The translations under genes were made by a program, and so were the position numbers. The notes under the pieces are model-generated. The model was given only the letters and a program-made list of their open reading frames with translations, did not search any database and had not been told where the DNA came from. From Phallusia mammillata (taxonomy: Eukaryota), in the NCBI GenBank assembly GCA_965637545.1, contig OZ281500.1, positions 5,332,001 to 5,396,000 of the forward strand: 64,000 bases of DNA. The letters are read 5' to 3'. The number at the start of each line of letters is the position of its first letter. Position 1 is the first letter of the stretch. This document shows, in pieces, positions 5,014 to 61,945 of the stretch.

Positions 5014-6817
5014 ATGGATTATGTACGAATTCTAGTAGTTTGGTTCGCCTTGACCGGTGTGTCTTTGGCAGAAGAAATGGTGACAACAGCAGTACCCAAT
5101 AATGTAAATGAACCTCAGTCGTGTAGCTGTGAGGATTTAAGCAATCTTGAAAAGGTGGTGATGGTTATGCAGGAAGGCTTAATGGATTGGAAGGCAAGAA
5201 AAACAGAACAAAGGGGTTTGAGCAGATTTAACAACATTGTGCCTATTACAAGACATTGATTGTTTTAAACCTTTCACTAAAGCGCAATATATATTGCTTT
5301 CTGTAACTATAAACAAGCACATTAAAATACTAGTTCCAGGCCAAAAAAGACGATTTATGCATGACAACATCACACATTGTTTTGCATTGAATCAACCAAA
5401 CCTTAAATTAAACACTTTTGTTTGAAGATCGCCTTAAAAACACGACTTGTGAGGAAATTTGGAAAAGCGGTGTGACTGAAAGTGGAGTTTACCCCATTTA
5501 TCCGTTCCATGACCGCAGCAAATCTCTCGATGTATATTGTGATTTTACAATTGATCTACCAGGGTGGATAGTAAGTTTTTTTTGTCAGTGTTGGAATTTT
5601 AAATATTCGATCTAAACTCTGAATCGACAACTGAGGTTCCGTCGTATTTCTAAATAAACCTTAGTTGTCGACTGTAATTTTGAAGTTTGTCGATTTGCCT
5701 AAGTGACATTTTGCAGACCTTTCAACGCCGAATAGATGGATCTGAAAACTTTTATCGGTACTGGGACGACTACGTGAGTGGATTTGGACATTTGAATGCA
5801 GAGTTTTGGATGGGTATGTCTTTTATTCACCTGCAAAAAATCCACGTTAATTGGTTTATTTTACTACAGAATGTTCTTGTTTTTGTATCATTTTTTTTGT
5901 TCGTTTCGATAAAATGAAACTAGTTATCACACGTCTTTAGTGTATAGTGTACAAAAATGAGCAAACAAATCACTTTCGCCATTACGTCTCAAACTCAAAG
6001 GATGGAGTTCATTTAGGCATGTAATGTATTTGAAGCACGCACAGCGCAATGAAGGGTGGTTTTTATTTTATGACACAGAAGTTTTCAGTTGCGAACCTTA
6101 ACCAAAATAATAGTAGCTGTAACATGCTGAAAAAAAAAACAGTTTTACACCACCCTTCGTTTTGTAGCATTTGTTCAATGTATAGCATTGTGTTTACTTG
6201 GACCATTCTGGCGCATCGCTCGAAATAATGTAGACACCGTGTTTGATGCTGTATATTTGTACAGGATTGGAAACTCTGCACCAACTCACTTCAGAGCGAG
6301 AATACGAACTCAGAGTAGATATGGAAGATTTTGAGGGACAAACCAGATTCGCAAAATACAGGTATCTATTTTGGTGATCTAGAGTTGTTATAAAAAACTT
6401 TTCAGTCGTTTCATATTCCACGGCCCAAATCTGTTTCTAGTACATTTAAAGTGGGAGACGGAATAGGCTACACTCTCCAGGTCAATGGGTATTCCGGAAA
6501 CGCAGGTTTGATATACCCACGCAAGTAAACATACATTTTAATTAAAAAAAAACTGTGATTAATGTACAGGTGATGCAATGGCAATTCATAACAGAATGAA
6601 GTTTACAACAAGAGACAAGGACCAAGACCACGCACCACACAACTGTGCCTCAAAATTCCAAGGAGCTTGGTGGTATAACTACTGCCACGAAACCAACCCA
6701 AACGGATTGTATTTGGCAGGACCCCATCACTCTTTTGCTGATGGTGTTGAGTGGTATACATGGCATGGACACTATTACTCGCTTAAAAGAATTGAATTCA
6801 AAATCAGAACCAAGTAG
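5014..6817 (+). CDS. FReD lectin gene A (class 1 N-terminus), secreted fibrinogen-domain protein, ~283 aa if the 5215/5216 donor is used
   Basis: Exons: 5014-5215 (or 5193), 5428-5570, 5717-5813, 6265-6361, 6441-6505, 6570-6817. Signal peptide, SCSC, then FReD motifs [58 protein letters not shown]. Exons 2-6 have no stops. Confidence 0.8.
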
Positions 6818-7122
6818 TAGGGTTTTTGCAGCAATCATAATTTCTATCAAGTTCGGTTAATTCATTGATGATAATAATCATACATAAAACAATTTAATAA
6901 GGTACAATAGAAAATTTCAATTTGGTGTTGATAAAAAAAAGTGAAAACGCTATTTATGGATCCTGTTGATAAATTGTATGAAGATTAGTTTGTCACTAGT
7001 TGTTACAAGAGGAAGGCAATGGTAAAATTTGGGTTTAAAATAAAATTAGTCTCTATCGTGGCCACAAACCATAAGACGAAGGCACAACTGAATATTTATA
7101 TCTGGACATGTAAACAAATTTA

Positions 7123-7171
7123 AAGTAGGCATGGAAGATTTTGAGGGACAAACAAGATACGCAAAATACAG
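7123..7171 (+). pseudogene. Orphan 3' half of FReD exon 4
   Basis: ATGGAAGATTTTGAGGGACAAACAAGATACGCAAAATACAG|GTATC ([13 protein letters not shown]) with an intact donor and no neighbouring exons. Duplicate at 27056-27104. Confidence 0.85.
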
Positions 7172-8325
7172 GTATCAGCTATGGTAATGTACAGAAGTTG
7201 ATGTTAAAAACGTTTCAGAACTTAGTCGCTTTTGCAAACGAACGTTCAATTGGTAAGAACTCGTTTCAAATACACTAGTTACCCAAAACAATAGAACGAC
7301 TTTTGTTCAGCAAATACCGTTGTTCTCACGATAACGCTCGAGTCATGATCAAGTGGCTTAGACCTCCTGCGATCGACAGGCACCGCATAACACACGAACT
7401 AAAATCCAATAATACAAGTTAACATACTTGTACTAAAAAACAAGTCCAAATCAGTCTAAAAACAAGTTCAAATCTGCCTGAAAAAACAAGTCTGTACATG
7501 CCAAATGGCATACTTAGTATATTTAGGATATTACAAACAACTTCCAAACTTTACCACTACAGGATCCTAAATCAACTTCAAAAGCAGTTGCAAAACACCT
7601 CGATCACAACCAAATATTGACACGTCGTTATTTACAACGTCATCGAAATTTCCACATGGTTTTTCCCTGGTCGAGAATTTATTACTGCCGTAAGCTCAGT
7701 TAAACAGCTATAAACTGCCACGTAAAACTAAAATACAACAGTGTACTTGAATAAAAGTTCAAATTCACTATAAAAGTAGTTAAAAAACAAATAGCCTGCC
7801 GTACATATACAATCTGATTTGATAGAAACAAGACAAAAAGAATAACATTTTAATAGTAGGTAGCTAAACCAAACCATCTCAAATGTTCAAGAAAAAAGTT
7901 ATTACAACAAAGTTTGAAGTTATAAAAAGCGTAAAAATATTCTTTGCGCTAGTGTAGTAATGTCGTAAATTGACTGTGGGGAGGAGAGGTACATTAGTTA
8001 CGACGATATAGGTACACACATCGAATTGTAAATTAAAGCTCGTAAAATGAACCTAATACATTGACAATGAGTTTTTTTTATTTATTCCCTTGTTCATCGT
8101 GCACTTTACTACGCACATTCAGTGTTATTTGCCCTAAGGAAGGCGACCTGCATAGGACGTCGCAACGTCAGTTCCAAATACATTTGCCAGAAGAGGTCTG
8201 TATAGATTATATTATGTCTAGTAGAAACAGCTAATAAATGACCAAGAGTTTGTTTGTCTCTGCGCGATGCTAGTTGTAGTTTTTTAGCCAAATGATCGGT
8301 TATTTTTACTTTGACAGAAACCGTG

Positions 8326-10039
8326 ATGGGTTTTGTACGAATTCTAGCAGTTTGGTTTGCCGTAACAGGTGCATCTTTGGCGGAAGAAATGATGACAACA
8401 GCAGTGTCTGATAACACTCTGTCTAAATGAACCTCGGTCGTGTAGCTGTGAGGATTTAAACAATCTTGAAAATGTGATGACGGTCATGCAAAAACGGCTT
8501 GGTGCAATGCAGGAACAAGTACATGCATTGAAAGGCAAGAAAAACTGCAAATTTATCGCTGTACTACATGCCTATGCAAACTACTTTGGTGTTACAAACG
8601 CAAAGTTTCACATCGGTTAACTTACACTTGTAGGAATCACAATAGGCATCACCAAACGAAAACCAGGTTACAGACGCCGGTACAACAAAAAAATAATAGA
8701 ATGCTGATCATATCGATTCAAACTCACATTATGCACCGCAAACTTCGTTGTTTTGGCAGTGCAGTTAAGTAGTTAAAACATAACTAATTTCAAGCGACCT
8801 AACACATTGAACTCTTTTTGTGTTTTGTTATCAACCAAAACCTTGCACATGTTTGCAGATCTTCACAAAAACACGACTTGTGAGAAAGTTTGGAACAGCG
8901 GAGTAACCGAAAGTGGAGTTTACACAATTTATCCCTTCCATGATCGTACTAAACCTCTTGATGTATACTGTGATTCTACCACTGATCTACCAGGATGGAT
9001 AGTAAGTTTCCAGTATTACTTGTAGTGTTTTAGGTTATGACTGCTGTAGTGTAGTCAAGGCAATTTGTGCTCCTTTTTTTCGTTTAGACGTTTTAGCGCC
9101 GAATCGCCGAATCTGAAATTTTTTATCTGTACTGGAACGATTATGTGAACAGATTTGGGGATATGAATACAGAATTTGGATGGGTAAAGCATAAATCCGG
9201 ATGATTTAATGCTTCATGCCAGAAGTTTTTTGCAATCAGTATCATAATATTTCACTTTCTTTAATCGTTACAGTATTCACACCTAGATTGTTTTTTTTGT
9301 GTGACTTTTTTATCTTTTCGTTCAGTCCTAAAAGTGCCCAGAACAGTGTGCAAACACGTTAGTACTAACGCTTTTCTTTGCACAGGGTTGGAAGTTCTGT
9401 ACCAACTAACATCAAAGAGAAGATACGAACTGAGAGTGGACATGGAGTATTTTGAGGGAGAAACAAGATTCGCAAAATACAGGTAGCTGTGCAAGGAGTT
9501 GTTCCACTTTAATTATTCTTTTTATTTTGAAACCATTTTTCCTTAATATGCAAACAATTATGAAGTTACTGACACAAGGTATTGCATGTTTTTTGTTCAG
9601 CACGTTCAAAGTTGGGGAAGGAACTGGTTATGTCTTAAGTGTCTCTGGATACTCAGGCAATGCAGGTAAAGTATTTAAAAGCTGTACGTCATTTGAATGA
9701 TTATGGCTAAGGGTGAATAACACCAGTCTCTTTGTGACTAAATGACAAATTCAAATGTTTGCATAAACATGGGTTCCCATAACAGGAGAATAATTTTAGG
9801 AGACTGTTTGGAAAGGCACAACGGTTCGAAATTTTCGACAAGGGACAAAGAGATGCAAGTTCTTCTAGTTGTGCCTCACTATATAATGGAGCTGGGAGGT
9901 ACAACGCATGTCATTGCACAAACCCAGATGGATTATATCTGGGAGGCCCACATCATTCATACGCAGATGGTGTTGAATGGTATAAATGGCACGGGCAATA
10001 TTACTCACTCAAAAGACATTCAAAATCAGAGTCAAATAA
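8326..10039 (+). pseudogene. FReD pseudogene B (class 1)
   Basis: Exons: 8326-8534, 8859-9001, 9088-9183, 9386-9482, 9601-9665, 9800-10039. A 4-nt insertion in exon 1 gives an early TGA. TAG at 9094-9096. Exon 3 is 1 nt short. Exon 6 has several frameshifts. Confidence 0.92.
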
Positions 10040-10848
10040 CGATATATTATTTTGCACGTCCTACAATACAGTAGTTGCAATAACATTACATAGTGGCATT
10101 AAAATGATGCTTTGTACAATTTGACCTGAGTATAACCAATCGAATTCTCAATCATATTTTTCAAAGTAGCCCCAATCGCATTTTTCGAAGTAAAATGATT
10201 AAGAACGTGTACTGTATGCTGGTCTTTGTTTCAGAAAATAGAATGAAACTCTTGGAGGAGAAAAAATAAATTTGCATGTAGTGACACAAATCGACGAAAA
10301 GCGCAAAAATTTTCTCAGCGCAAATAAAAAACGTTTAGAAAATTGGTCCTCAAGCCAGTCAAGAAGAAAGTGACACTGGCAACACTAACAGGCACAATAA
10401 GCAAACTAAAGCATAATCTACAAAGTCATAGAACTGTGTTGTAACATATAGCTAAAGTACCGCGCTTTTCTTTTTAAATTTAGAAGAATATGAACCAAAT
10501 GAATTTCATCGTACGCCAAAAAAGACGTAAGTCGATAGTGACAACTTACAGTAACAAAACCTCTCTTTCATCATGCAGTTGTTTGAAGTGGAAAGTCAAG
10601 TACAAGTAACAGCATGCAGAAACACGGCACCTTCCTAATATTTTATGTGCCAGAGAACACAAGGTTATTTCTTACTTATTATTGAAAACGAAAGTAAGGA
10701 ACCTAACAAATACGATAACAACTGAAAAAAGGGTAACCAAAGAAGGAAGTCTGATAACTAAAACTGACAGGTGAAGTAATGCTTTCCCAACTATGATTAA
10801 AGAATTAAAAATTTTAACTTAAATACTGCACAAAAATATTTATTCTAG

Positions 10849-11010
10849 CTCATTTAAATTGAAAGCAGGAGATGGCTACACACTCCAAGTCAATGGGTAT
10901 TCAGAAAACGCAGGTTTGATTAACGGACACAATGAACTGTTTTAAAATAAAACTCTGTCGGTCATTTAACGGAATAATGGAATTAAGATTACAACAAGAA
11001 TCAGGAACAT
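10849..11010 (+). pseudogene. Orphan FReD exon 5 plus decayed start of exon 6
   Basis: An exact 65-nt exon, 10849-10913 ([21 protein letters not shown]), with AG and GTTTGA sites, followed by an AATAATGGAATTAAGATTACAACAAGA relic. Duplicate at 30775-30940. Confidence 0.85.
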
Positions 11011-15961: not shown

Positions 15962-16951
15962 ATGGCATTGGTAACAGGATTTTTGTCGGGCATTTTAGGA
16001 TCAATTGAACTGGAAACGGAGAAAGCTGTCAAAAAGCCAAAGGCATACAACGTTGGAAAAATTATTTTGGTTGCAATGTTCTTTGTAAGCAGTGCGATGT
16101 TTGCAGTGTACGAGCCTCATTTCGTTACTTGTTACCCTGTTGATAAACTAGAAACCGAGCAGACCATGGAACAAAAAAATGACGTCGGTTTTCAGTGCTG
16201 CTCACAGAAGCCTTGGATTCAGCTCATGAAATATTCTCCGCTGACTTTTCTTGCAGTCACTTGTTTCTATTTTCTGGCTAGCCAAGTGATGGTGGGTTGT
16301 TCCAAAACCAACCTCTCCAAAAAAATACAGTCATTCGTTTACCTTTTCCACCAGTTCCGCCGAAGCAATGGAAAATTTGACTATCACAAAGTGAAAAGAA
16401 ATTACATCCAGCACGATTCACCAGCAGAAATAGTAAAAGACTTTGTTTTTTCCGAAAACGGTCAACTCAGGTACACGGAAGATATTTACCAAGGATACAA
16501 GAAAGACGCCACTCTATGTTTAGTTGCAGCAGGTGTTGGAATCTTTTTCGGACTCCTAAATGTTATTTCAGGAGGAATTAATCACCAGCAGTTTCATTGC
16601 AACTTGGGCAATTTATCTGAAGGGGTTATTGCGTACAAATGTTTTGTTCTAAATGTTGATGTTTTTATTATTTTGTCCGTCATGTTTTGCGTGCTGGCAA
16701 TAATCCAAATTGGTTTAAAGTTGGCACTACTCATCGCAATACGGCACATTAGAGACGTAGATGGAAACCCAATACCACTGGGTATATGCTTGCAAAATAC
16801 CGATTTAAAGTTTTTACTTGTCATAACCAAAACAATTACCGTGAACGAAAGAAGACAGTTCGCGGATTATTTGCAAGATTGTATAAATAATCCGGAGGCA
16901 CATGCACTTCCATTGGTTGGTAATAATAATGGACAGTGTGTACAACAATAA
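15962..16951 (+). CDS. LRRC8/pannexin-like 4-TM large-pore channel protein without LRR domain (L1), 329 aa, intronless
   Basis: Manual alignment to the LRRC8A pore domain, written as L1 / LRRC8A: MALVT/MIPVT; VTCYP/MICLP; CC..K.W..LMKYSP/CYENRLHWFAKYFP; LSKKIQSFV/SSKLEHFV; DIYQGY/DIVYRLY; FHC..AYKC/VDC..TYRC; TDLKFLL/NDFAFML; RQFADYL/KRFAVFL. Four hydrophobic segments. First ATG at 15962. Confidence 0.85.
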   Translation: MALVTGFLSGILGSIELETEKAVKKPKAYNVGKIILVAMFFVSSAMFAVYEPHFVTCYPVDKLETEQTMEQKNDVGFQCCSQKPWIQLMKYSPLTFLAVTCFYFLASQVMVGCSKTNLSKKIQSFVYLFHQFRRSNGKFDYHKVKRNYIQHDSPAEIVKDFVFSENGQLRYTEDIYQGYKKDATLCLVAAGVGIFFGLLNVISGGINHQQFHCNLGNLSEGVIAYKCFVLNVDVFIILSVMFCVLAIIQIGLKLALLIAIRHIRDVDGNPIPLGICLQNTDLKFLLVITKTITVNERRQFADYLQDCINNPEAHALPLVGNNNGQCVQQ

Positions 16952-19437: not shown

Positions 19438-21208
19438 ATGGGTTGTTCGCAAATAGTTGTTAGTTTTTGCGCTGCTCTGCTTGGCATTGGTTATGGACAA
19501 CGATCAGAAATCGTTCCATTTGATCCATATACATCGAACGATTTGTCTATTTGTCAGTGTCCAGATATCAACGACTTACAAAGCGCAGTGGCTGACCTGT
19601 ACGAAAGACTTGACTTGTTGGAAGGTGAGAATATGATTACCCACATATTTAAGACATTGAATAACAAAATTAAAAAAAATAAGCAATAAAAAACAAAGAA
19701 ACCGTTGCAACCCTAACGAAATTCTTAGAACGGCTGAAAAATACGACTTGTGAAGAAGTTTGGAAAAGCGGAGTGACCGAAAGTGGAGTTTACACGATTT
19801 ATCCTTTCCATGACCGCACTAAATCTCTTGATGTTTATTGTGATTTCACTATTGATTTACCAGGATGGATAGTAAGTCTGCTCTATTATTTGCAATTCAA
19901 AAATGTTCCAACCACACCCACAATTGAAATGCTAATATTATTGTAAAGTTATGCTCTGTTACGCCTCATAATTCAACTTACTTAGACATTTCAACGCCGA
20001 ATAGACGGATCTGAGAATTTTTTCCTCTACTGGAATGATTACGTGAACGGATTTGGAGACATGAATACAGAGTTCTGGATAGGTATGACTTTTATCCACA
20101 AGTGAAACACCACAATTTTGTTTGAATTCGGTGTTTGTGCTTAGTTTCTTGTTTTCCGTTTTAAACAAATAAGGTATCAGTGTAAATATCAAAACCGAAA
20201 ACGGGAATTGGCCAGTTTAGGATGATATATCTTTACTGAATTTGCTTTTAAGATGGTCTTTGCGCCACCTTTCGATACTCCCAATTTGAGTGTGAATTCT
20301 TACGTTACTAGAATTTCCAGCTACAACGGTAAGCAAAAACTTTCGTGTTAACAGGAGTCTGTTCGATATACCGCGCCGTGTGTTTCGGTTATTCATAATA
20401 GACTAAAATATGGTGTAGTAAATCAGTAGTTCTCAAACGGTGCGTCGTTTCAATTTTCCAAGGGCGTCGCAGAATAGTTCCGTTTAGTGGCTTTTTATGT
20501 TTTGTATCAATAAACACAACTTTAAAAATAAGTTTCCTCATTAACTTTTATTTGCTGGTGCGACGTAAGATTAGAAAACTTTTCCAGAGGCGTCGCAACA
20601 AAAAAAGTTTGAGAACCACTGGTGTAAACGGTGTAATTTCTTTATTTTGTTCATACAGGATTGAGAACTCTACACCAACTGACATCAGAGCGACCGTACG
20701 AACTTAGAGTAGACATGGAAGATTTTGAGGGACAAACCGGATATGCAAAATACAGGTAGCTGCATGATGGACTAGGGTTGTTATCAAAATACTCCCAGAC
20801 GTTTTATATTGCATGGCATGAAATTTATTTTAAGCACATTTAAGGTGGGAGCAGGAGTTGGTTACACTCTCCAGGTCAATGGGTACTCCGGAAACGCAGG
20901 TTTGATATACCCACGTCAGTAAACATATTCGAATTAAAAAAAATTGTTGGCAACTTGCAGGTGATTCCATGGCAACTCATAACGGAATGAAGTTTACCAC
21001 AAGAGACAGAGACCAAGACTACGCACCACACAACTGTGCCTCAAAATTCCAAGGAGCTTGGTGGTATAACTACTGCCACGAAACCAACCCAAACGGATTG
21101 TACTTGGCAGGACCGCACGACTCTTTTGCTGATGGCATAGAGTGGAATACATGGCATGGTTATGATTACTCTCTTAAAAGAATAGAATTTAAAATCAGAA
21201 TTAGGTAA
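19438..21208 (+). CDS. FReD lectin gene C (class 2 N-terminus), 278 aa, intact
   Basis: Exons: 19438-19624, 19729-19871, 19986-20082, 20659-20755, 20835-20899, 20961-21208. All introns GT-AG; 837 nt open. Confidence 0.93.
20424..20621. mobile_element. hAT MITE in intron 3 of gene C
   Basis: TIRs CAGTAGTTCTCAAAC / GTTTGAGAACCACTG; degenerate TSD TAGTAAAT/GTGTAAAC (5/8). Confidence 0.8.
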
Positions 21209-25016: not shown

Positions 25017-26749
25017 ATGAGTTATTTGCCAATTGTGGTTAGTTTTTGTGCTGCTCTGCTTAGCAGTGGTTACGCACAACGATCACAAATCGTCCCGTTT
25101 GATCAATACACATCGAACGATTTATCTATTTGTCAGTGTCCAGATGTCAATGACTTGCAAAGCGAGGTGGCTGACATGCAAGAAAGACTTGACATGTTGG
25201 AAGGTGAGAAAAAGATTTGCTGACATTGAAAAACAAATTACATAAAAATAACATGTAACAACAAAAAAACAAAGAAATCATTGCAGCCCTAACGAATTTC
25301 TTAGAACGGCTGAAAAATACAACGTGTGAGGAAGTTTGGAAAAGCGGAGTAACCGAAAGTGGAGTTTACACGATTTATCCTTACTTCGATCGCACTAAAT
25401 ATCTTGATGTTTATTGCGATTTTAGCATTGACCTACCCGGATGGATAGTAAGTTCGCTCTATTATTTGCAATTCAAAAGCGTTTTAACCAAAATCGAAGT
25501 AATGACATCTACCGCAAGGTTGTGTTCTGTTATGCAACAAAATGTAACTTACTTTAGACATTTCAACGACGAATAGACGGATCTGAGGATTTTTTTCTCT
25601 ACTGGAACGACTACGCAAATGGGTTTGGAGACCTGGATACAGAGTTCTGGCTGGGTACGACTTTTATCCATCTGTAAAACACGAAAATTTCGTTAAATTT
25701 CAAATAGGATCTTTACGTGTGGAAATACATAAATAGTATAGAGTTAGTATCTTTTTTTTTGTTTAAAGATACATAAATAAACAAATTATGATGGTTGAGC
25801 GGTTTATTTCATTAAACCCGAGCCGCTAATTACGATTTCCTAAACAGAAAAATATAACAGAACCAGCAAAAAAGCAATCTGTATTATGTTTTGTGCTTTT
25901 TTCAAAACAGCACATAGAAAAATATGCAAGATAACAGCTACTGGGCGGTAGCAATGAAGATTAACATACGAAGATTCGTCCATGCAAAACCATAACGAAT
26001 CAGATTCGTCCATGCAAAAACCCATAACAATAGAGTGGTTATCAGTTTTGCTTTAAAAGTGGTAAAACGGGAATGTATGAAATTCCTGAATTCCGTGTAA
26101 TGAAGCCTATTGATATTTACATTTTGGGGGCATTTTGTTTTTATTGAGACTAAAATATTGGGTAAATAATGTATTTTCGTATATTTGTACAGGATTGGAA
26201 ACTCTGCACCAACTGACATCAGAGCGAGAATACGAACTCAGAGTAGACATGGAAGATTTTGAGGGGGAAATCAGATACGCGAAATACAGGTATCTACATT
26301 GGTGATGTACCAAGGTTGTCATCAAAAACCTTTCAGTGGTTTTATATTCCACGGCACAAATTTGTTTTTAGCACATTCAAAGTGGGAGGAGGAATAGGTT
26401 ACACTCTCCAGGTCAATGGATATTCCGGAAACGCAGGTTTGATATACCCACGCCCGTAAACATTTTTTAGTTTAAAAAATCCGTGGGTAACTTAATTGCA
26501 GGCGATGCCATGAAGGGGAATAACGGAATGAAGTTCACAACAAGAAACAAGGACCAAGATATTTATCCAAATAATTGTGCCTCAGAATTCCAAGGAGCTT
26601 GGTGGTATAATGCATGTCACCTTACTAACCCAAACGGATTGTATTTGGCAGGACCCCATCACTCTTTTGCTGATGGTGTTGAGTGGTATACATGGCATGG
26701 ACACTATTACTCGCTTAAAAGAATGGAATTCAAAATCAGAACCAAGTAG
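25017..26749 (+). CDS. FReD lectin gene D (class 2), 278 aa, intact
   Basis: Exons: 25017-25203, 25305-25447, 25558-25654, 26193-26289, 26372-26436, 26502-26749. All GT-AG, open frame. Confidence 0.93.
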
Positions 26750-35941: not shown

Positions 35942-36017
35942 ACTGCCGAAAGAGATTAGGTATCGGTTTCCTCGTATTGTAAACATTTTTATAAAATGTG
36001 TCGTGCATAACCTATAT

Positions 36018-43476: not shown

Positions 43477-44417
43477 ATGGTTTACTTGCAAACTATAGCT
43501 GTTTAGTTCGCCATAACAGGCGTTTCCTTGGCAGAAGAAACCACAACAATAGCAATGTCCAACGACACTTTAAGTGAACGTTCGTCGTGTAGCTGCGCGG
43601 ACTTAAACAACCTGCAGAATGTGTTAGAAGAAATGCAGAAACAGTTTGAAAAAATGGAGCAACGAGTTGACGGGTTGGAAAAAAAAAACTTGTTGCGAGT
43701 TTGTCAATATAGACTTTGAGTATAACTAAAACAACATGTAGATATTATTGAAAAAATATGTTAAAGCAAATAAGTTGGTCTTGGCTTTTAAATAGATATT
43801 GATATAAAACAGATAGGCTACATAAGATTAATAAATAGCTACTAATTTGGTCTTGGCTTTACAACAAATTGTATCAAATAATATTTTGGACCTGCAGCGT
43901 TGTACGACATTTTGTAAACCCTAGTTAACGTTAAGTCCCATTTATCATTGCCTGATAACTTCTATGGGGAGTGGCATATACCAACACCAAATAAATAATT
44001 GGGGGGGAAATAAGTAATGAAGAAACCTAAATATGTCAATGACATTAAAATTAGTTCATAATTAAAACCTCTCAACGCACATGCAAACCTGCTTATATAT
44101 CTCATTTAGTAACATACATGTAAAAATTAAATTTAGGCAAGACATTAAACTCGGTCCAAGACGAAAAAGCACCGATTCCATCTGAAAATCTAAGACACAA
44201 AACTTTTTTTCTTTATATACAACGTATATAACGTTATATACAAAGGTTATATACAACGTGGCTATCGTTTGTAGATCTTCACAAAAACACGACCTGTGAG
44301 AAAGTTTGGAACAGCGGAGTGACAGAAAGTGGAGTTTACACGATTTATCCTTTCCATGATCGCAGCAAACCTCTTGATGTGTATTGTGACTTTACCATTG
44401 ATTTACCAGGATGGATG
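43477..44417 (+). pseudogene. Truncated FReD pseudogene G (class 1; exons 1-2 only)
   Basis: ATG at 43477. TGG>TAG at 43504-43506. The exon-1 donor is replaced by an A-run. Exon 2 at 44275-44417. No exons 3-6 follow. Confidence 0.88.
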
Positions 44418-44769
44418 GTAAGTGGCTACGTTGTCCATCAATTTGGAAGTTCAATTTTTACATACAACCAAACTTGCGCCTATTCAATTATATGGAAGCA
44501 AACAAGATACTTGAATGCTTTACTACTAATGGTGGCAGTACGGTATGCAGGGTTGCCATCGACTTGAAACCAAAAATAAGGACAACCGAAAAATTAAATT
44601 CTTATGCGAAACGAAACAAACGTTTTTGAACAAATCTTTGCATTTATATGAGCCATGACATAATATTTGCAATATTTTGGCCAGAAACAATCTGTTCCAG
44701 CAACTCATTGTTCGTAAAAAATACTAAGTGCATCTCACAACAGGCCAGGTCTAGGTTCTACTGTAAAAT

Positions 44770-47700
44770 ATCAGAACAATAAATGCGAATAACCTGACAA
44801 AAAAGACGGAGTAACTCTTGGTTTGACCTCATGATCTCACCTACACGGTATAGTTACAAATACGAAACCCAAGTAGTCCTAATTTATGTTTTCTGTGCGT
44901 TACTGATTAACGGTTGCAAAAACACATTCCAACCATCAGAACAAAACTTAATCATTTGTTTACAAACTTAAACGATGCAGTTGGGAATTGATAGGAACCC
45001 AGGGCGCAAAAACATCTTCAACAACCTTGTCATTTTTTCGCAGTATGATTTTGTTATTGGGATCACGGTAAGGTTAATTTATATGCTTCAAAGGTCGTAA
45101 GTAAGTTGGCATCAAGAGCAACATTCGCTACAACACACGTTAACAGTGCTGACAGTTACATGTCAATCAAAAAACTACTTTAGAAACCAAAACTTTAAAG
45201 TAAACTGCTTTTGAAAATCTATTATCAAATCAACTAAAATCGTTGTGACCGAAGATTGAGGTAAACCTCACATACATCAATCAAGTTTGGAGCCTAAAAG
45301 ACAAGACTCAAGACAACTAGTTTTATTCGCATAACTTCTGACAACTAAAATACTGCAACAATATACTGCAATTCAGTCACTTTTTTAGTGCTGAAGTACC
45401 CAAAATGTATTTTAAATTTTTATGTTTGTGTATGAGTCAAGTCCCTGTTTTTGCCAAAGATTGTGCAATTATTGGGCTTAAATTTAACACGGTGTGATGT
45501 ACCGAGATACCGATCAATTAAGAAACCCATTTTCATCGCTTACAATTAAAACTGGTAAAGTTAGTGTACCGTTACATGTCGCCCAAAAACGAAGTAAGTA
45601 ACACAAGTAAAGTACGTCACCTGTAAAAACAGTAGAGCTACTTCCACAGGAACTCACAACACGCCGGTTTGGGAATTTCCGGTAAGTGACGCAACGCAGC
45701 ATAGGTGTTTACGGGGACAACAATTGCTGATTCAGCAAGTTGCAACATGCTGATTCAGTAATTATTGTCACAACCCTTTCAAGTGCCTCGAACAGTAAAC
45801 ATAAATAGAACCCTGAATCATTGACCATATATTTTAAATGCATACATCGATAGTTTTACGCTAAGAGAACTCCGAACAGAGAGAAATTTCCAAAAAGTGA
45901 TAACCGTGCAAAAGAACCAGTTTACAATTTTACGACAGATAATTCAGCTGTTTACTATAAAAAGAACCACTTGCTGGACACCTATATAATGGCATAACAT
46001 CGCACTGTAACGTACCTATACTTAATGTGGCAAAAACGATATATGGTAACATTCTTCTGTTGTTAGCATACTAAAGAAACATAAAAGTTTTGTACAGCAA
46101 ACAAGAAATAGTTTTGCAAAAGTCTGTGCTAATGTTTAATGTTTCTTTAAGACATTGACACGTGTATTGTTGGATTTGGCACTAAAAATGTCCTAGCACG
46201 CAATTTGCTTTTGACATTGCATGACATCTTTTAAAATTACATTTATTACAGGCCGGGAAAAATTAGTTCTTTTGCCATCTGCTAAAATGTTTGGACCACA
46301 TCTATAAGTTTATCCAGCTGGTTTGTTCGTTTGACAGAAATAGACACTGACCAAACAAAAGTGGGGGTCGAATGCAGGTTGTGACAAACTGATAATCATG
46401 TTTAAACAAATATCTTGACTTAGCGCATAAACACAAAGAAACTGGCGCAATTTTTATGTCGAAAAAGCAAAATCTATCTGTATTTCTTTACCACAACTGC
46501 TCTCTTGAAAACATTTGGGGTTGAAAAAGTTATTACTGAGCTGACCAGGATAAACTTCGAAATACCAAGCAACGCTCTTTTTACAATGGTATTTTAACAA
46601 ATAGGGTCTGTATTTATCAATCAGAAAATATGAAATTTGGCAAATTTGATTGGGTCTAAACAAAATTTCATTTTATAAACAGCGCTGAAAATCGAAAGTG
46701 TTTGAGAGTTTGCTAGCTTAATGAGAGCTGGAAACGCGACTGTACATAAAATGTTACAACACAGTAGTGTTAAAGAAACTATTCACCAAAGTCCAGTTTG
46801 ACGCACGTTTACATTGGGACACATGGTAACCACTTAAAGCAGTCCCACGGATGTACGAAGAAATCTATATTTGCAACAACATATGGCATGTTTCAGGACC
46901 TGACGCCAAACAGTACCAAAATGTATTTGTTTTTTTATGCTTTACGTCAGAAATAGTACATAAAGAGCGTCCAACGCGGAATGGTTTAGTGTCTCGGGAT
47001 AGAGTTGTTAAGCAACGTTTGACAAAAAGAAAAGAATCTGTCTATGTGATAAAAGTTTCTAAAAGTATTGCAACCAAAAACGTAGCAGATATGAGTTCTT
47101 TGCAAATTGTGGTTAGTTTTTGTGCTGCTATGCTAAGCAGTGGTTATGCACAACGATCACAAATCGTCCCGTTCGATCCATACACATCGAACGATTTGTC
47201 TATTTGTCAGTGTCCAGATATCAACGACTTACAAAGCGAGGCGGCGGACATGCAGGAAAGACTTGACATGTTGGAAGGTAAGAAAACGATTACCCACATA
47301 ATTGCTAACATTAAATAAGAAAGTAAATTGAAAAAAAAACTAACAAAAACCAAAAACAAGAAATCGTTGCAAGTCGCAGCCCAAACGAATTTCTTAGAAC
47401 GGCTGAAAAACACGACTTGTGAGGAAGTTTGGAAAAGCGGAGTAACCGAAAGTGGAGTTTACACGATTTATCCTTACTTCGATCGCACTAAATCTCTTGA
47501 TGTTTATTGTGATTTCAGCATTGATCTACCAGGATGGATGGTAAATTCGCTAAATTATTTGCAATTCCAAAGCGTCCAACCAAAATTTAAATAATAACCG
47601 CAAATGGTGTGTTATGTTACGCAAAAAAATGTAACTTACTTTAGACATTTCAACGCCGAATAGACGGGTCTGAGGATTTTTTTTCTCTACTGGAACGACT

Positions 47701-49140
47701 ACGTGAACGGGTTCGGAGACCTGGATATAGAGTTTTGGATGGGTACGACTTATATCCGCCTGTAAAACATAAAATTCGTTAAATTTTGAGTTGACATCTT
47801 TTCTGCTTAGAAATAGATAAATACTATAGAGTTGGTATTTTTTTGTTCAGACATACAAAAATAATAAAATTACGATGAATTAAGACAAGTAAAAACCGGG
47901 AGTCACCCTGGAACTGAACCCAAACCCAGCACATACCGGTTCGAGCGGTTCATTTCATCGAACCCAAACCGCTAATTACGATTTCCTTACCAGAAAAATA
48001 TAACAGAAACCAATCTGTATTATATTTTCTACTTTTTTCAAAACAGCACATAGAAGAATAAGCGACATAACAGCTATTAGGCGGTAGCAATGCAAACAGA
48101 GCTCTTAACATACGAACTAAACAATAAAGTATGCTCAAAACCGATAAATGACGTAACACTGAATAATGACGTAAGCACAGTTATGTTGGGATCTAAGTTT
48201 ATTAGTTAGTATTGTTGTTATCCTACTATAAAACCACCAAACCCACCCCAACTCTAATAGCCCTACTGGTCAACATCTTATAGAATTGGCTTTTATGTGT
48301 TCGCATATGCTCTTTGCGCCATGTGAATCCTTACGTTAGCAGAATTTTTAACAATGGCAGTGCAAAAATAGAGGTGGTCCTATTAAAAAAATGACGCTCT
48401 GATGTCAGTTGGTGCAGAGGTTTATTAAAAAGTCTGTTATTGAGACTAAAATATTGCATTAACAGTGTATTTTCGAATATTTGCACAGGATTGGAAACTC
48501 TGCACCAACTGACATCAGAGCGAGAATACGAACTCCGAGTAGATATGGAAGATTTTGAGGGGGAAATCAGATTCGCGAAATACAGGTATCTACATTGGTG
48601 ATGTATTGGGATTGTTATCGAAATATACTCCCAAACGTTTCATATTGCATGGCATAAATTTTGTTTCCAGCACATTCAAGGTGGGAGCAGGAGTTGGTTA
48701 CACTCTCCAGGTCAATGGATATTCCGGAAACGCAGGTTTGATATACCCACGCCAGTATACATATTCAACTTTTAAAACAAACTGTAACTACCGTACAGGT
48801 GATTCAATGACCTATCAAAATGGAATGAAGTTTACAACAAGAGACAAGGACCAAGACAATAATCCAAATAATTGTGCCTCACAATACCAAGGAGCTTGGT
48901 GGTATAACTATTGCCACAGAACCAACCCAAACGGATTGTACTTGGCAGGACCTCATGACTCTTTTGCTGATGGCGTAGAGTGGAAAGCATGGCATGGACA
49001 ATATTACTCGCTTAAAAGAATAGAATTTAAAATCAGAACCAAGTAATGATGGTGCTTGTGGCAATAATAATTTATCAAGATAAAGATCGGTTAATTTCAA
49101 TCCCAATCAAATTAATTTGCCTCAGTAATAAATTACGTTT
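44770..49140 (+). repeat. Segmental duplication of ~21825-26800 (gene D region and upstream spacer)
   Basis: Long colinear matches, e.g. 22740-22925 vs 45514-45702, and D vs H upstream region, exon 1 and introns. Confidence 0.88.
47091..49046 (+). CDS. FReD lectin gene H (class 2) with +1 frameshift in an exon-3 T-run (recent pseudogene or assembly error)
   Basis: Exons: 47091-47277, 47398-47540, 47645-47742 (98 nt vs 97 in paralogs; T8 vs T7 in D), 48489-48585, 48671-48735, 48799-49046. All other exons are open. Confidence 0.8.
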
Positions 49141-49157
49141 TGGCGTTAGTAAAAGTA

Positions 49158-51125: not shown

Positions 51126-51208
51126 CACTAGATGCAAAAGAAGAAAGGTATTAGCAAAAAAACAGGAAACGGAAAACGGAATGCGTGGTAACGGAATAGT
51201 CTCTAGAG

Positions 51209-53621: not shown

Positions 53622-53711
53622 CTCTAAACCAAAATTACTATCTTTTTGCAGCTTTAAACTAGAGTCGAATATTGGTTTAGGCTCGAATATTGGTTTAGGC
53701 TATATCTTATA

Positions 53712-54970
53712 ATGCCGATCTTGGGGGTTAGTTCAGTAAATGCTTTGCCTTTCCTGTCCCTATTTAAAGACAAGCCACTTCTGCCACCTTTAGAAAAAGT
53801 AAGAAACGTATTGTTTCTCTCAATGCTTGTGGCTGGGTGTGCATTATTCACTGTCTACGAATCCACGTTTGTTGCTTGCTTTTCTCAACGAAACAGCTCA
53901 ACAGCTTTAAATTACGTAGAGTTTGTCAAGGAAGAAACACACATCAACCAGCAATGCGGATTCATTGACGTTTGGATTCACTATCTGAGGTATTCGCCAC
54001 CGGCGTTTTTAGCACTTTCTGTATTGCTTTTTATGACAAACAGTCCGTTTTTCACCTGGCACAGTCAATGTTGCTCAGAAGCTCGATAAATATGCAGAAC
54101 TCTACAAACTCTGTCAGACGAAAAACGACAACGACAGCCCGAAAATTCCTGCGATGAAGATCGAATTGTCGGACAAGGTAAATGATCTTTTGGATAGAGT
54201 TGCTGTTTCACAACCAGACCCAATCGCAGCACATAATGTGCAAGTAAATATGGATAATCTTAACAACCAACAAAAAGAGAAAATAATGAAAACCGCAAGG
54301 TTTTCAAATTGACATTTTAGTCACGTTTTTCGGTGTTCCGTCTTTTCTTTGCCTGCTGATCTATTGCTACAGATACCGCCACTATTTGGTAGACAAGCGT
54401 TGCCGAAAAGATGACAAATTCCTCATCCGATTTAAAAACGAGAAAGATGCAGAAAATGTAAAAGAAACGATATCCGAGCTGGAACAAGGCCCATCTAAAT
54501 TCAAGACATCATTGACGAAAACTATGCACTTTTCATTAAAGCAATTAAAACGCAAATGACGCGTACATCGCTACAAAGCGTTTTAAACAAGGGATATTTG
54601 TGATTTCGCAGCGCATAAAAATAAAGCAGAACAAAACAACATGCCTCAGTGTTTAACAAAGGAGTTTGTAGAAGGCATGGCGAAAAAAGTGCGGCAAATA
54701 TGGAATTTTACATTACTTACTTCCGTAAATTGGCAGTTACGTTTTTGGTTTGCTTGTGGCTTACTTTGCAATACCTTATTTGTGACAGTCGTCTTATCAG
54801 CGCTCATACTTGTCAGCGTTTGCTTTTGCCGATTTTAACATTTCTAGTTTTATTGTGCATAACAAACCGCAATGGTCATGCTAGATTACAAGTGGTATTA
54901 CTTGAACAGTTTGAAATCGACTGTAAAATTACCGGCTCCGCACAGCTGTTACGCAAGTTCACATAATTAT
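53712..54970 (+). pseudogene. Divergent LRRC8/pannexin-like channel paralog L3, frameshifted
   Basis: LFLSML..CALFTVYESTFVACF and QQC..VWIHYLRYSPPAFLA match L1/L2. After a frameshift near 54062, VNVAQKLDKYAELYKLC continues the homology. Further frameshifts and stops occur downstream; the 3' end is approximate. Confidence 0.72.
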
Positions 54971-59381: not shown

Positions 59382-60581
59382 CAGGGGTGGGCAAACTACG
59401 GCCCGGCAAAGGAGTTCATGCGGCCCGCCAAATGTTGGGAAATTTTAAAGAGAAAGTTGCATTTGCACAGAGCAACGCTGAATAGTATTATAACCACAGG
59501 CGTAGTTTTGAAAAATACCGGGGGTGTTTACGTGAATTGGTCTGCTGTTTCTGCCACGTTATCATGCAAATATTCACTTGAAACAATTTCTTCGTTCGAT
59601 AAAAGTAAAAGCCATTCACATTTTCAAATACAGCCCACTTTGTACTGTTGACGCCAAAACTTTGGTCACTTTGGATCAAGTTTAGGTCTTTGCAGTACAT
59701 TGCAAACGGACATTAAACACGGGTTTAGAATCATTAACACAGACCACGACACTTAAGATGGATACTAAAAGCGGCTCGCTTTGTTTAATGTTGGCGCAAG
59801 GAATTTATTAACAAAAAAACGTGGTGCAGCCTATGTTATCGTTTTGATCATTCACTTGGACATTGGATCACCATGCACGACATGATGATGCCACATAGGC
59901 GAAATATATATTCCTTCATTTAAAACCGACTGATTCTGTTTAAACCAAGGATTTACAGTCTTTCGGTTTTACTGTATTAATGTTGCAACAAATGTTTGTT
60001 TATTTTTTATTTAATTCTAGCTTTTCAACCAATGTTTGTGCAAACAAAGTGACAACAAACGTATTTGCACATAGCTAAAAATATACTATGTTAATATCTT
60101 GAGCTAAATCAGGGGTGCACAACCTGCGGCCGGACGGTCACATGCGGCCGTGACCATGTATGTTAAAATACATGTACTGGCTGCCGTGACGTAACTAAAA
60201 CTATTTTGCCAAATATTTTGATTTTCAAACAGCTAAAAACAGATTTCGTGGGACTGAAAAAAAGATTACCATCCTAAGAACCAGGCTTATTGTCTGCAAA
60301 CAATGCGAATAAACAGGCACCGCAATCGTCACAATACCGATTATGACGTCATAAACAGTTAGCTCTGTTCAGTTAAACTTATGCACTAAGTCAGAAATTA
60401 TTAATATGAGCATTTTAAGCAACTTTAAATGGTATATACATGATATAAACCTAATTCTTTACACCAGTTATTAAAAAAAACAAGCAAGCAATTGGGGGGC
60501 CGTTGGTGAAATACAATGCGGCCCCATAAGATTAAGAACTTTTAAATGCGGCCCTTGCGCTGAAAAGTTTGCCCACCCCTG
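59382..60581. mobile_element. hAT non-autonomous element, composite with a second left end at 60110
   Basis: TIRs CAGGGGTGGGCAAAC / GTTTGCCCACCCCTG; perfect TSD ACCTAATG. Internal CAGGGGTGCACAACC at 60110 belongs to the 50729 family. Confidence 0.88.
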
Positions 60582-61545
60582 ACCTAATGCTTAACCAACC
60601 CAAATGTCAAAATGATGGTTTGAAAGCACGTGACCGCTACATATGCGAGCGGTATCCCCACTCTTACACACACAACAAAGCAATATACCTAATAAACACT
60701 GGACAAACATAAAAACCGAAAACATATTTTATCAAAATCAAAACTTCGATCCGGATCCGATCAATTAATTGCCTAAACATTTTAGCAAAAGCCTTTCAAT
60801 GTCGACAAAAATTTTAACGCGTGTTTCAAAGGCCCAAAAAAAGTTTAGACCGGTGCCTAGATATGTCTTTTAGAGATAACCGAAAATACTACATGACAAT
60901 TAAGAATGCATCCACCAATCACAAAAATGCCACGGATCCGCCACAGTTGAGGGTTGAATACTACAAAATCATGTGTAGCAAAGACTGAAAGAAAAAATAT
61001 GGCTCATGTAATCCCACAAAAAGCGTGTTATTCAAAGTAAAAAAAAACACGTCACTTAAGGTTATGATAACTACGAATATAAGCGCTGCAAAATGACACA
61101 GGTTAAGTAGCAGCAATTGTTATTTATATTTCAGAACGTATGGCGTATATAACCAAGGACAAAAGCATCCTACCAGGTTTTTGCAAACAAATGTTGATTG
61201 AGAGTGTCCATGAAACAACTTGTAACTTAACATTTTTTTGAAAATAGAGTATAAGTAGTTTTACGTGTAATGATGTATCTGTATATATTTTCTTTTGTTC
61301 ATCTTTCCATTGAAAATTCGACTTTTTATGATAAAATATACCTTTTTAGGCAATAGCATTAGCTTAAAATTTTTAAAGCTTGTACACAGCTGGCCATCCC
61401 ATTAACCTTTTGCCAAGCAAACATTGCCACCAAAAATACACAAAATGACGAGCAGCTGAAGCAATATTTGATCTTTTCGTTCTTCTACAACACAACGGGT
61501 ATATAAGGGTTATTATTTTGTAAAAATATACTCAAAGAAAAAAAA

Positions 61546-61945
61546 ATGAACTGGCAAATTATGGTTAGTTTTTGTGCCGCCCTGCTTTGCAGCGGTGATG
61601 CGCATCAATCAAAAATGGTTCCGTTTCACTCATATGAATTAAAAGACGGGACTTGTCTGTGTTCGGATATCAACGACTTACAAGAAGAGATGACTGATAT
61701 GCAATGGAGACTTGACATGTTGGAAGGTAAGAAAAATATTTATCCGCGTAATTATAGTATAAGTTGCTGCGTTGAATAAAACTTGCCACCTCAATTTCTC
61801 AGAACGACTTAAAAATACAACTTGTGAAGACGTTTGGAACAGCGGAGTGACCAAAAGTGGAGTTTACACCATTTATCCTTTCTTCGATCGCACTAAATTT
61901 CTTGATGTATATTGTGATTTCACCATTGATCTACCAGGATGGATG
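61546..61945 (+). CDS. FReD lectin gene I (class 2, divergent), exons 1-2 only in this window
   Basis: Exon 1 61546-61726 (signal peptide, TCLC, coiled coil, LEG|GT) and exon 2 61803-61945 are open. Exon 3 is not reached before the window ends. Confidence 0.82.

What the first reader, a model, noticed from the sequence alone, without database searches (positions are those of the whole stretch)
5014..61945. Candidate undescribed system: fibrinogen-domain lectins co-duplicated with LRR-less LRRC8-like channels
Seen: same-strand order FReD A, psiB, channel L1, FReD C, D, psiE, channel L2, FReD F, psiG, H, psi-channel L3, FReD I. Each channel gene is followed by a class 2 lectin, and L3 is far more diverged than L1/L2, so the linkage is older than the last duplication. 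Established: FReD lectins are invertebrate recognition proteins; ascidian self-incompatibility uses linked pairs of a fibrinogen-like ligand (v-Themis) and a polycystin-type channel (s-Themis). Inference: this may be a different ligand/sensor plus large-pore effector cassette (immunity, allorecognition or cell lysis/ATP release) using a pannexin/LRRC8 channel. Passive co-duplication is not excluded.
Basis: partly seen in the sequence, partly recalled or inferred. Interest (0 to 1): 0.85.

Follow-up and report, generated by a model that had tools for sequence, protein, structure and literature searches.

The report
Lectin array interleaved with LRRC8-like genes
In a probable sea-squirt genome, a tandem array of fibrinogen-type lectin genes is interleaved with genes for LRRC8-like channel proteins that lack the leucine-rich-repeat (LRR) domain. 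The channel identification holds, but the pairing is best explained by passive block duplication of two large gene families, not by a lectin-channel system.

Summary
Nine same-strand fibrinogen-domain (FReD) genes lie here. A, C, D and F are intact; H and I carry frameshifts; psiB, psiE and psiG are dead. Between them sit L1, L2 and psiL3.

L1 and L2 are truly LRRC8-type. Pfam misses them, but a family profile hits LRRC8A at E 2e-9, and an AlphaFold model (pLDDT 79) matches LRRC8 pore domains best. The reading frames end where the LRR domain would begin.

The proposed lectin-channel system is not supported:
- One old block duplication copied L together with the FReD gene downstream of it.
- psiL3 is a truncated recent copy of L4, which lies just outside the window.
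- L4, L5 and L6 follow with no FReD gene between them.
- The genome holds at least 35 more LRRC8-like genes at 11 other places, none near a detected FReD gene.
- FReD genes number in the hundreds.
- Paralogs are under purifying selection.
- L1 is transcribed in two probable RNA runs that show nothing of FReD C.

Passive co-duplication is the best reading (about 0.7). The scan had already noted this LRR-less family on other DNA of this genome.

The parts
5014..6817 (+). FReD A. It has a class-1 signal exon and six exons: 5014-5215, 5428-5570, 5717-5813, 6265-6361, 6441-6505, 6570-6817. The frame is open, with a weak exon-1 donor (GTTTGA).
8261..10041 (+). psiB, a dead class-1 FReD. It has an in-frame stop and a 1-nt deletion in exon 3, and 8-nt and 4-nt deletions in exon 6.
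15962..16951 (+). L1, a single-exon 329-aa protein with four TM helices and an LRR-less LRRC8-type pore domain. It is covered by contigs of two probable RNA runs.
19438..21208 (+). FReD C. Class 2, intact, 278 aa. Exons: 19438-19624, 19729-19871, 19986-20082, 20659-20755, 20835-20899, 20961-21208.
25017..26749 (+). FReD D. Class 2, intact, 278 aa, and a mosaic. Exons 1-3 resemble H. The 3' part, from about 26179 in intron 3, lies in a long block that matches the A region (6251-12889) at 95.4%.
28195..29972 (+). psiE, a dead class-1 FReD. It is a near-copy of psiB with the same lesions.
34967..35941 (+). L2, a single-exon 324-aa LRR-less LRRC8-type protein. This is the protein that was modelled and used for the fold searches.
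36355..37710 (-). Reverse-transcriptase reading frame of a retrotransposon (no other domain tested), inserted between L2 and F. It is not part of the gene families.
   Evidence: RVT_1, E 1.5e-17
39579..41409 (+). FReD F. Class 2, intact, 281 aa.
43496..44423 (+). psiG, a FReD remnant. Only a trace of a class-1 exon 1 and exon 2 (44272-44423) remain.
47091..49046 (+). FReD H. Class 2, with all six exons and splice sites, but a +1 frameshift in a T8 run in exon 3 (about 47675-47682). It is either a pseudogene or a homopolymer assembly error.
53712..54499 (+). psiL3, a truncated copy of L4. It has a frameshift near 54060, a stop, and a deletion of L4 residues about 199-264 (TM3 to TM4).
61546..64000 (+). 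FReD I. Class 2; exons 1-2 are in the window and the gene continues to about 65025 beyond it. A +2 insertion in exon 4 gives a stop, so it is probably a pseudogene.

Best explanation
Two tandemly expanding gene families happen to abut at this locus and have been copied together by segmental duplication.

Family 1 is an array of secreted lectin genes. Each encodes a signal peptide, a short coiled coil and a fibrinogen-related domain. About half the copies are broken, which fits normal birth-and-death turnover.

Family 2 is a local clade (L1, L2, psiL3, L4, L5, L6) of single-exon membrane proteins. Their four TM helices, two cysteines per extracellular loop, extracellular beta-sheet and first cytoplasmic helices are those of the LRRC8 (volume-regulated anion channel) pore domain. 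The protein stops where LRRC8 would begin its LRR domain.

Inferred mechanism: L1, L2 and L4 assemble into pannexin/LRRC8-like large-pore oligomers. Without LRRs they must be gated differently. They act independently of the neighbouring lectins.

Shown here: the gene models, the homology and fold of the L proteins, the duplication structure, the genome-wide distribution of both families, purifying selection, and probable transcription of L1.

Inferred: channel activity, oligomeric state, and absence of a lectin-channel interaction.
For: Identity of the L proteins:
- A profile of the L family plus two distant homologs hits LRRC8A at E 2e-9 (query 69-313 aligned to LRRC8A 104-401). It hits LRRC8C at 1.6e-7 and LRRC8D at 1.4e-4, with no pannexin listed even at E up to 10. 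A 27-sequence profile gave the same families: LRRC8A about 1e-9, LRRC8D about 1e-7, LRRC8C 5e-7 to 1.5e-5.
- The AlphaFold model has pLDDT 79 and pTM 0.77.
- Foldseek against PDB: the top 50 hits are all LRRC8 or pannexin, E as low as 2.6e-7.
- VIA-align: the best match is LRRC8A, Z 15.4 over 266 residues.
- ESM Atlas: LRRC8B-E at TM 0.68-0.70, pannexin 0.64, connexin 0.50-0.52.
- Extracellular cysteines are conserved in a 2+2 pattern.

Duplication structure:
- A colinear block, 13555-20108 matching 32787-40196 at 70-87%, contains L and the downstream FReD gene. Next to it is a 95.4% identical block, 6251-12889 matching 26179-32793.
- psiL3 is a partial copy of L4.

Genome-wide context:
- L4, L5 and L6 follow with no FReD gene.
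- The window's L genes form one clade, support 100/99.
- 45 family matches genome-wide lie at 11 other places. All 22 examined are LRR-less single-exon reading frames.
- No FReD gene lies within 1.5 kb of those loci. No listed FReD match lies within about 0.6 Mb of those places.
- The FReD family gave 623 first-look candidates.

Selection and expression:
- dN/dS is 0.34 for L1 versus L2 and 0.07-0.22 for FReD pairs.
- L1 is covered in probable RNA runs X1 and X2, with nothing on C exons 1-3, 5 and 6 or on the L1-C spacer.
- No RNA-like run holds the C-D stretch.
Against: - The L-FReD juxtaposition has persisted through at least two duplication events. The L clade sits on a long branch, which could reflect a new function tied to its neighbourhood.
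- Only 150 of 623 FReD candidates were scored, and only 1.5-kb flanks of the other arrays could be read. A FReD gene a few kb from another array cannot be excluded.
- Synteny in related species could not be examined.
- The RNA runs are few, small and of guessed type.
- Channel function and oligomerisation are untested. The one co-folding job gave no verdict.
Confidence: 0.7

Rival explanations
1. This is a functional lectin-channel cassette. A secreted FReD lectin would act as ligand or sensor for the adjacent LRRC8-like large-pore channel, in immunity, allorecognition or lysis/ATP release. Linkage would be kept by selection.
For: - An L gene sits 2.5-3.6 kb upstream of a class-2 FReD gene in both old duplicates: L1-C and L2-F.
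- Both families have intact, selected members.
- Ascidians do use linked pairs of a fibrinogen-like ligand and a channel-type receptor, the s/v-Themis system (PMC7018956).
Against: - The adjacency is accounted for by a single block duplication plus a partial L4 copy.
- L4, L5, L6 and all other arrays have no detected FReD partner.
- The contig of the distant homolog P0002 has a tandem paralog but no FReD gene within 10 kb.
- Extracellular loop 1 of L1/L2 is the most conserved part (pN 0.037). FReD pairs have omega 0.07-0.22, so there is no sign of diversification.
- L1 RNA is seen without FReD C.
- No L1 variant was seen in the DNA run.
- The arrangement is not nested or antisense as in Themis.
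Confidence: 0.08
2. This is a co-regulated neighbourhood without physical interaction. L and FReD genes would share a chromatin domain or enhancers, for example in haemocytes or tunic cells. Co-location would then be mildly advantageous, but the proteins would work separately.
For: - All genes are on the same strand in a compact 75-kb region.
- Tandem immune-gene clusters are often co-regulated (general knowledge).
Against: - In the available probable RNA runs, L1 is covered while C and D are not.
Confidence: 0.12
3. The L proteins keep the LRRC8 fold but are not pore-forming channels. They could be auxiliary subunits, scaffolds or trafficking factors. Alternatively, the local copies could be drifting towards loss.
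For: - The L clade lies on a very long branch.
- Three of six local copies are broken or interrupted.
- Pfam models fail on them.
- dN/dS of 0.34 is looser than for the FReD genes.
Against: - The four TM helices, the 2+2 cysteines and the extracellular sheet are kept across about 23% identity.
- dN/dS is well below 1, and L1 is probably transcribed.
Confidence: 0.1

Closest known systems
Vertebrate LRRC8A-E (VRAC subunits)
   Same: The pore domain matches in several ways:
- Profile E 2e-9 to LRRC8A residues 104-401.
- Best structural match: Z 15.4, TM up to 0.70.
- Four TM helices.
- A beta-strand plus helix in extracellular loop 1 and a beta-hairpin in loop 2.
- Two cysteines per extracellular loop.
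- Cytoplasmic helices after TM4.
- The wider family in this genome carries an N-terminal 'MKPWWE' motif. From memory, this recalls the KPWWD motif of LRRC8A.
   Different: - There is no LRR domain. The frame stops about 60-70 residues after TM4, and no LRR Pfam hit was found in any of the 10 paralogs tested.
- Identity is only about 14-16%.
- Pfam PF12534 does not reach its threshold on L1, L2 or L4.
- The intracellular loop is much shorter.
- The family is a lineage-specific expansion of 40 or more single-exon genes.
Pannexins / innexins
   Same: They share the superfamily fold: pannexin-2 Z 14.4, pannexin-1 Z 13.6, INX-6 Z 10.4. Both lack an LRR domain and have a 2+2 cysteine pattern. The language-model feature search puts L2 nearest to pannexin/innexin clusters, score 0.90-0.91.
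   Different: No sequence-level match was found. There is no PF00876 hit, and no pannexin chain was listed even at E up to 10 in the PDB profile search. By sequence the family is nearer to LRRC8.
Ciona s-Themis / v-Themis self-sterility pairs (PMC7018956)
   Same: A fibrinogen-like secreted protein gene is linked to a gene for a channel-type membrane protein, in an ascidian.
   Different: - In Themis the lectin gene is nested in the receptor's first intron on the opposite strand. The receptor is polycystin-1-like (REJ, GPS, LH2). Both partners are hypervariable and multi-allelic.
- Here the genes are separate, on the same strand and 2.5-3.6 kb apart. The membrane protein is LRRC8-like, and paralogs show purifying selection.
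Tandem FReD lectin arrays of invertebrates (ficolin, techylectin and ryncolin-like genes)
   Same: The genes encode a signal peptide, a short coiled coil and a Fibrinogen_C domain. They form tandem arrays with many pseudogenes and mosaic copies. FReD arrays on unidentified eukaryotic metagenome contigs look alike.
   Different: Nothing essential differs. The closest named database hit is only 54% identical, so the local clade is lineage-specific.
Other LRR-less LRRC8-like arrays of this same genome (earlier notes s1-355917, s1-355951)
   Same: They belong to the same protein family, also as single-exon tandem arrays.
   Different: I found no conserved small upstream reading frame with a crude search.

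Membership tests
LRRC8 (VRAC subunit) family | Pannexin-like four-TM pore domain homologous to LRRC8 by sequence | tested here: met
   Family profiles hit LRRC8A, C and D at E 1e-9 to 1e-4 over TM2 to the post-TM4 helices. The distant homolog P0001 passes the Pfam PF12534 threshold, 26.7 bits against 25.
LRRC8 (VRAC subunit) family | Pfam PF12534 (Pannexin_like) above the gathering score on the protein itself | tested here: not met
   L1, L2 and L4 give no hit. A six-frame scan of the genome with PF12534 gives no match.
LRRC8 (VRAC subunit) family | C-terminal leucine-rich-repeat domain (about 15-17 LRRs) | tested here: not met
   The reading frames stop 60-70 residues after TM4. No LRR family was found in L1, L2, L4 or in 10 longer paralogs. 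The alignment to LRRC8A ends at residue 401. From memory, that is just before the LRR domain.
LRRC8 (VRAC subunit) family | Hexameric channel assembly | tested here: inconclusive
   Co-folding three copies of L2 gave no verdict. This is evidence neither for nor against.
Pannexin/innexin superfamily (fold level) | Four TM helices, extracellular three-stranded sheet plus a helix in loop 1, and two conserved cysteines per loop | tested here: met
   The model has pLDDT 79, with strands at 56-59, 212-216 and 224-229 and a helix at 69-82. Conserved cysteines: C57, C79/80, C214, C228 in L2 and C56, C82, C248, C261 in L4.
Pannexin/innexin superfamily (fold level) | Pfam Innexin (PF00876) match | tested here: not met
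   There is no hit on L1 or L2. The genome scan had no candidates, and that control was uninformative.
Fibrinogen-related domain (FReD) lectins | Fibrinogen_C domain (PF00147) behind a signal peptide | tested here: met
   PF00147 hits at E 1.7e-28, 9.8e-25 and 8e-07 on exon translations. Full spliced models of C, D and F are 278-281 aa with hydrophobic N-termini, judged by reading. No signal-peptide predictor was run.
s/v-Themis-type self-incompatibility pair | Lectin gene nested antisense in the first intron of a polycystin-1-like receptor gene | tested here: not met
   The genes here are separate and on the same strand. The membrane partner is a single-exon LRRC8-like gene. Themis features are taken from PMC7018956.
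s/v-Themis-type self-incompatibility pair | Hypervariable, multi-allelic partners | tested here: inconclusive
   Paralog omega is 0.07-0.34 and extracellular loop 1 is conserved. One DNA run shows no variant in L1 but shows variant contigs in C exon 6. No population data were available.
s/v-Themis-type self-incompatibility pair | Gamete-specific expression of the two partners | not testable with these tools
   The runs are coded and their tissue is unknown.

The most novel reading that the evidence does not exclude
The L1-C and L2-F pairs, and perhaps I-L4, would be working two-gene modules. A secreted FReD lectin would gate or target an LRR-less LRRC8-type large-pore channel, so the lectin would supply in trans the sensing role that the LRR domain plays in vertebrate LRRC8. 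That would be a new kind of innate-immune or allorecognition effector in tunicates. The family would also be the long-missing invertebrate relative of the VRAC pore.
Probability: 0.07. Interest if true: 0.8.

Novelty: new variant of a known kind. Interest (0 to 1): 0.35.

Why it matters
LRRC8 genes are described as chordate or vertebrate innovations, made by fusing a pannexin-like pore to an LRR domain (PMC6363415, PMC3928549). A large tunicate family whose pore domain is nearer to LRRC8 than to pannexins, yet has no LRRs and escapes Pfam, bears on that origin. It could descend from the pre-fusion form or reflect secondary loss of the LRRs. It also offers natural LRR-less pores for studying gating.

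The lectin-channel system itself, the reason this finding was flagged, would matter for invertebrate immunity or allorecognition. The evidence here favours a passive arrangement, so it should not be carried forward as a system without synteny and expression data.

Tried and rejected
- **Direct Pfam, word-index and sequence-level PDB searches.** Pfam on L1, L2 and L4 gave no pannexin or LRRC8 hit. L2 gave only a weak CD20 hit (E 3e-4, below threshold). CD20 also appeared weakly in the PDB profile search at E 0.012. I rejected a CD20/MS4A reading because profile, fold and full-length coverage all favour LRRC8. The word-index homolog search with L2 found nothing. The profile of the window copies alone found nothing in PDB.
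- **Exhaustive profile search.** A search of 1.84 billion representatives gave only two distant homologs. A second profile search added only relatives of one of them.
- **Co-folding.** Three copies of L2 gave no verdict, so it counts neither for nor against. I did not submit a lectin-channel co-fold, because I do not claim binding.
- **Flanks of the other arrays.** Only 1.5-kb flanks and coordinate lists could be used.
- **FReD arrays in other organisms.** Two arrays on metagenome contigs have no L-like gene within 10 kb. These are not close relatives, so this says little.
- **Operon reading.** I consider it unlikely. The L1-C spacer is 2.5 kb and carries no RNA contig.
- **Operators' limits.** No N stretches occurred in the 134 kb examined.

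Full report
**What is in the window.**
The window is G000:C7:5332001-5396000 of a 240-Mb eukaryotic genome. The genome has many intron-split connexin genes (43 matches). Connexins are confined to vertebrates and tunicates (PMC6391747). This fits a sea squirt, as earlier notes of the scan also say.

Six-frame searches and exon-by-exon alignment to gene C confirm the reported order, all on the + strand: A, psiB, L1, C, D, psiE, L2, F, psiG, H, psiL3, I. The FReD genes share a six-exon plan with conserved GT-AG sites. Their translations hit Pfam Fibrinogen_C at E as low as 1.7e-28.

- C, D and F translate cleanly to 278-281 aa. A is open with a weak exon-1 donor.
- psiB and psiE share a stop and several frame-breaking deletions. 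psiG keeps only exon 2 and a trace of exon 1.
H has a run of 8 T where D has 7, in exon 3. I has a +2 insertion in exon 4 that gives a stop. The H lesion could be a homopolymer error.

**What the L genes are.**
L1 (329 aa) and L2 (324 aa) are 67% identical single-exon reading frames. They have four hydrophobic segments and conserved cysteines, two in each predicted outer loop. Direct searches were blank:
- Pfam gave no pannexin or LRRC8 hit.
- The word-index homolog search found nothing.
- A PDB sequence search with the local profile found nothing.

An exhaustive profile search of 1.84 billion representatives found only two distant homologs, P0001 and P0002. P0001 passes Pfam PF12534, 'Pannexin-like TM region of LRRC8'.

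With these two added, the family profile hits LRRC8A at E 2e-9 over LRRC8A residues 104-401. It hits LRRC8C at 1.6e-7 and LRRC8D at 1.4e-4, and no pannexin is listed. A 27-sequence profile gave the same picture.

A first AlphaFold model (pLDDT 61) already drew only LRRC8 and pannexin chains in Foldseek. With the deeper alignment the model reached pLDDT 79 and pTM 0.77. Its matches:
- Foldseek E as low as 2.6e-7, with all top 50 hits LRRC8 or pannexin.
- VIA-align best match LRRC8A, Z 15.4, 266 residues, model 16-314 against LRRC8A 15-401.
- ESM Atlas TM 0.68-0.70 to LRRC8B-E, 0.64 to pannexin and about 0.5 to connexins.
- The language-model feature search also pointed to pannexin/innexin/Pannexin_like clusters.

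The frame ends 60-70 residues after TM4 and carries no LRR. So 'LRRC8-like, ending where the LRRs should start' is correct. Because a defining feature (the LRR domain) is absent, I file the proteins as LRR-less LRRC8-type members of the pannexin superfamily, not as LRRC8 proper.

**Beyond the window.**
Just downstream, FReD I ends at about 65025. It is followed by L4 (intact, 333 aa), then L5 (a frame change near residue 85) and L6 (interrupted by a proline-rich repeat). No FReD gene lies between or after them for at least 29 kb. None lies in the 30 kb upstream of the window either.

psiL3 is an 82-92% identical copy of L4 plus about 650 bp of its upstream DNA. It has a frameshift, a stop and a deletion of TM3 to TM4. 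It is therefore a young, dead copy of a different subfamily.

**Genome-wide picture.**
The family profile finds 45 matches in the genome. Besides this locus they lie at 11 other places, most of them tandem arrays:
- C8 at 1.66-1.69 Mb and 16.23 Mb
- C6 at 17.21-17.24, 17.68-17.72 and 17.80 Mb
- C2 at 4.05-4.07 and 8.94 Mb
- C7 at 16.31 Mb
- C3 at 5.99 Mb
- C5 at 2.24 and 2.63 Mb
- C15

The 22 examined are single-exon reading frames of 261-758 aa with an N-terminal 'MKPWWE' motif. None of the 10 tested has LRRs. In a maximum-likelihood tree the paralogs group by location. L1, L2, L4 and L5 form one clade (100/99) on a long branch.

FReD exons are very numerous: 623 first-look candidates and 165 matches at tens of places. 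None of the listed FReD matches lies within about 0.6 Mb of another L array. No FReD exon occurs within 1.5 kb of the 22 paralog loci. The contig of the distant homolog P0002 has a tandem paralog but no FReD gene within 10 kb.

With about a dozen L loci and tens of FReD loci in 240 Mb, one chance juxtaposition within 20 kb has a rough probability of 0.15-0.3. This is my estimate, and it is an inference.

**How the interleaving arose.**
Self-comparison shows a colinear old duplication, 13555-20108 matching 32787-40196 at 70-87% identity. It carries L together with the first exons of the downstream class-2 FReD gene. Next to it is a much younger or gene-converted block, 6251-12889 matching 26179-32793 at 95.4%. 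That block carries the 3' part of A or D and psiB or psiE. Other blocks link the C-D spacer and D to the G-H spacer and H.

So the L1-C and L2-F adjacencies are one event counted twice. psiL3 is a third, independent, partial copy.

**Selection, variation and expression.**
- L1 against L2 gives dN/dS 0.34 (dS 0.67). Extracellular loop 1 is the most conserved part and the cytoplasmic loop and tail are the most divergent.
- Intact FReD pairs give omega 0.07-0.22.
- Neither pattern is what a diversifying recognition pair would show.
- Contigs of two probable RNA runs cover L1 (15917-16840). They cover none of the 2.5-kb spacer and none of C exons 1-3, 5 and 6. A third run covers neither gene. The only signal in that part of gene C is a high-copy repeat at 20424-20623 in intron 3, and contigs that carry it reach at most 20629, short of exon 4.
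- No RNA-like run holds a twentieth or more of the C-D stretch. These runs are small and their type is a guess, so this is weak evidence of disjoint expression.
- The DNA run shows no variant in L1 but shows variant contigs in C exon 6.

**Comparison with known systems.**
In the Ciona Themis pairs, the fibrinogen-like gene is nested antisense in the first intron of a polycystin-1-like receptor gene, and both partners are hypervariable (PMC7018956). None of these features is met here.

LRRC8 genes are said to be absent from invertebrates and to have arisen by fusing a pannexin-type pore with LRRs at the origin of chordates (PMC6363415; PMC3928549). I found no paper in the held library on LRR-less LRRC8-like genes in tunicates.

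The scan itself has already noted this family on other DNA of the same genome (s1-355917, s1-355951). There the repeated neighbour is a small helical protein, not a lectin. Another note describes a FReD array co-duplicated with a GAIN/GPS receptor (s1-388508, unchecked). Both fit the view that these arrays copy whatever lies beside them.

**Verdict.**
The lectin-channel 'system' is not supported. Passive co-duplication at a chance junction of two expanding families is the best reading (about 0.7). A working module remains possible at under 0.1. The lasting point of interest is the LRR-less LRRC8-type family itself.

Noticed in passing
window 938-3220: A 468-aa reading frame on the minus strand (1288-2694) is rich in 'EQRKLDAE' coiled-coil repeats and has no Pfam hit. 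It lies within a span bounded by 474-bp direct repeats (938-1410 and 2757-3220, 96.4% identical), the first of which overlaps its 3' end. This could be a small LTR-like element or a local duplication.
   Followed up: no
window 20424-20623: A repeat of about 200 bp sits in intron 3 of FReD C. Its summed contig depth reaches hundreds of thousands in the DNA run against about 150 nearby, and it is also present in the probable RNA runs. It is probably a SINE or MITE.
   Followed up: partly
window 6251-12889 vs 26179-32793: A 6.6-kb block is 95.4% identical between the two copies, directly next to a colinear block that is only 72-87% identical. This indicates gene conversion or a younger overlaid duplication. 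The left edge falls in intron 3, just before exon 4, of A and D, which makes D a mosaic gene.
   Followed up: partly
window 15962-16240 (L1) vs 34967-35245 (L2): The first 92 codons or so of L1 and L2 have much lower synonymous divergence (pS 0.08-0.25) than the rest (0.4-0.9). This suggests a conversion tract at the 5' end of the channel genes.
   Followed up: no
window 50127-50564: A tandem repeat with a period of about 157 bp lies between H and psiL3. Copies are about 92% identical.
   Followed up: no
L009:485-769 (G000:C7:5406485-5406769): L6 carries a proline-rich repeat ('PSKPGEQESE'-like) in the stretch that encodes its cytoplasmic loop, together with a change of frame. It could be an expanded loop, an intron or a lesion.
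   Followed up: no
window 20974-21114: The DNA run X3 has a second contig over FReD C exon 6 that differs at 9 of 141 positions. This is too different from C for a simple error and too similar to be paralog A or D. It may be a divergent haplotype or an unassembled copy.
   Followed up: no
L014:10001-14622 (JGI 3300027611 contig) and L013 (SRR23343704 contig): Distant LRRC8-like, LRR-less genes occur on DNA from unidentified eukaryotes, two of them in tandem on metagenome contigs and one on a contig assembled from a single public run. P0001 carries a 300-aa non-LRR C-terminal extension. The family therefore reaches beyond this genome.
   Followed up: partly
G000:C8:16227579-16235520: Three near-identical LRRC8-like paralogs have open frames of about 740 aa. 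Their long C-terminal extensions have no Pfam match.
   Followed up: partly
G000:C5:20.0-27.3 Mb: Dozens of isolated matches to Fibrinogen_C positions 44-82 only are spread over about 7 Mb. This could be a repeated exon or a very large diverged FReD family.
   Followed up: no
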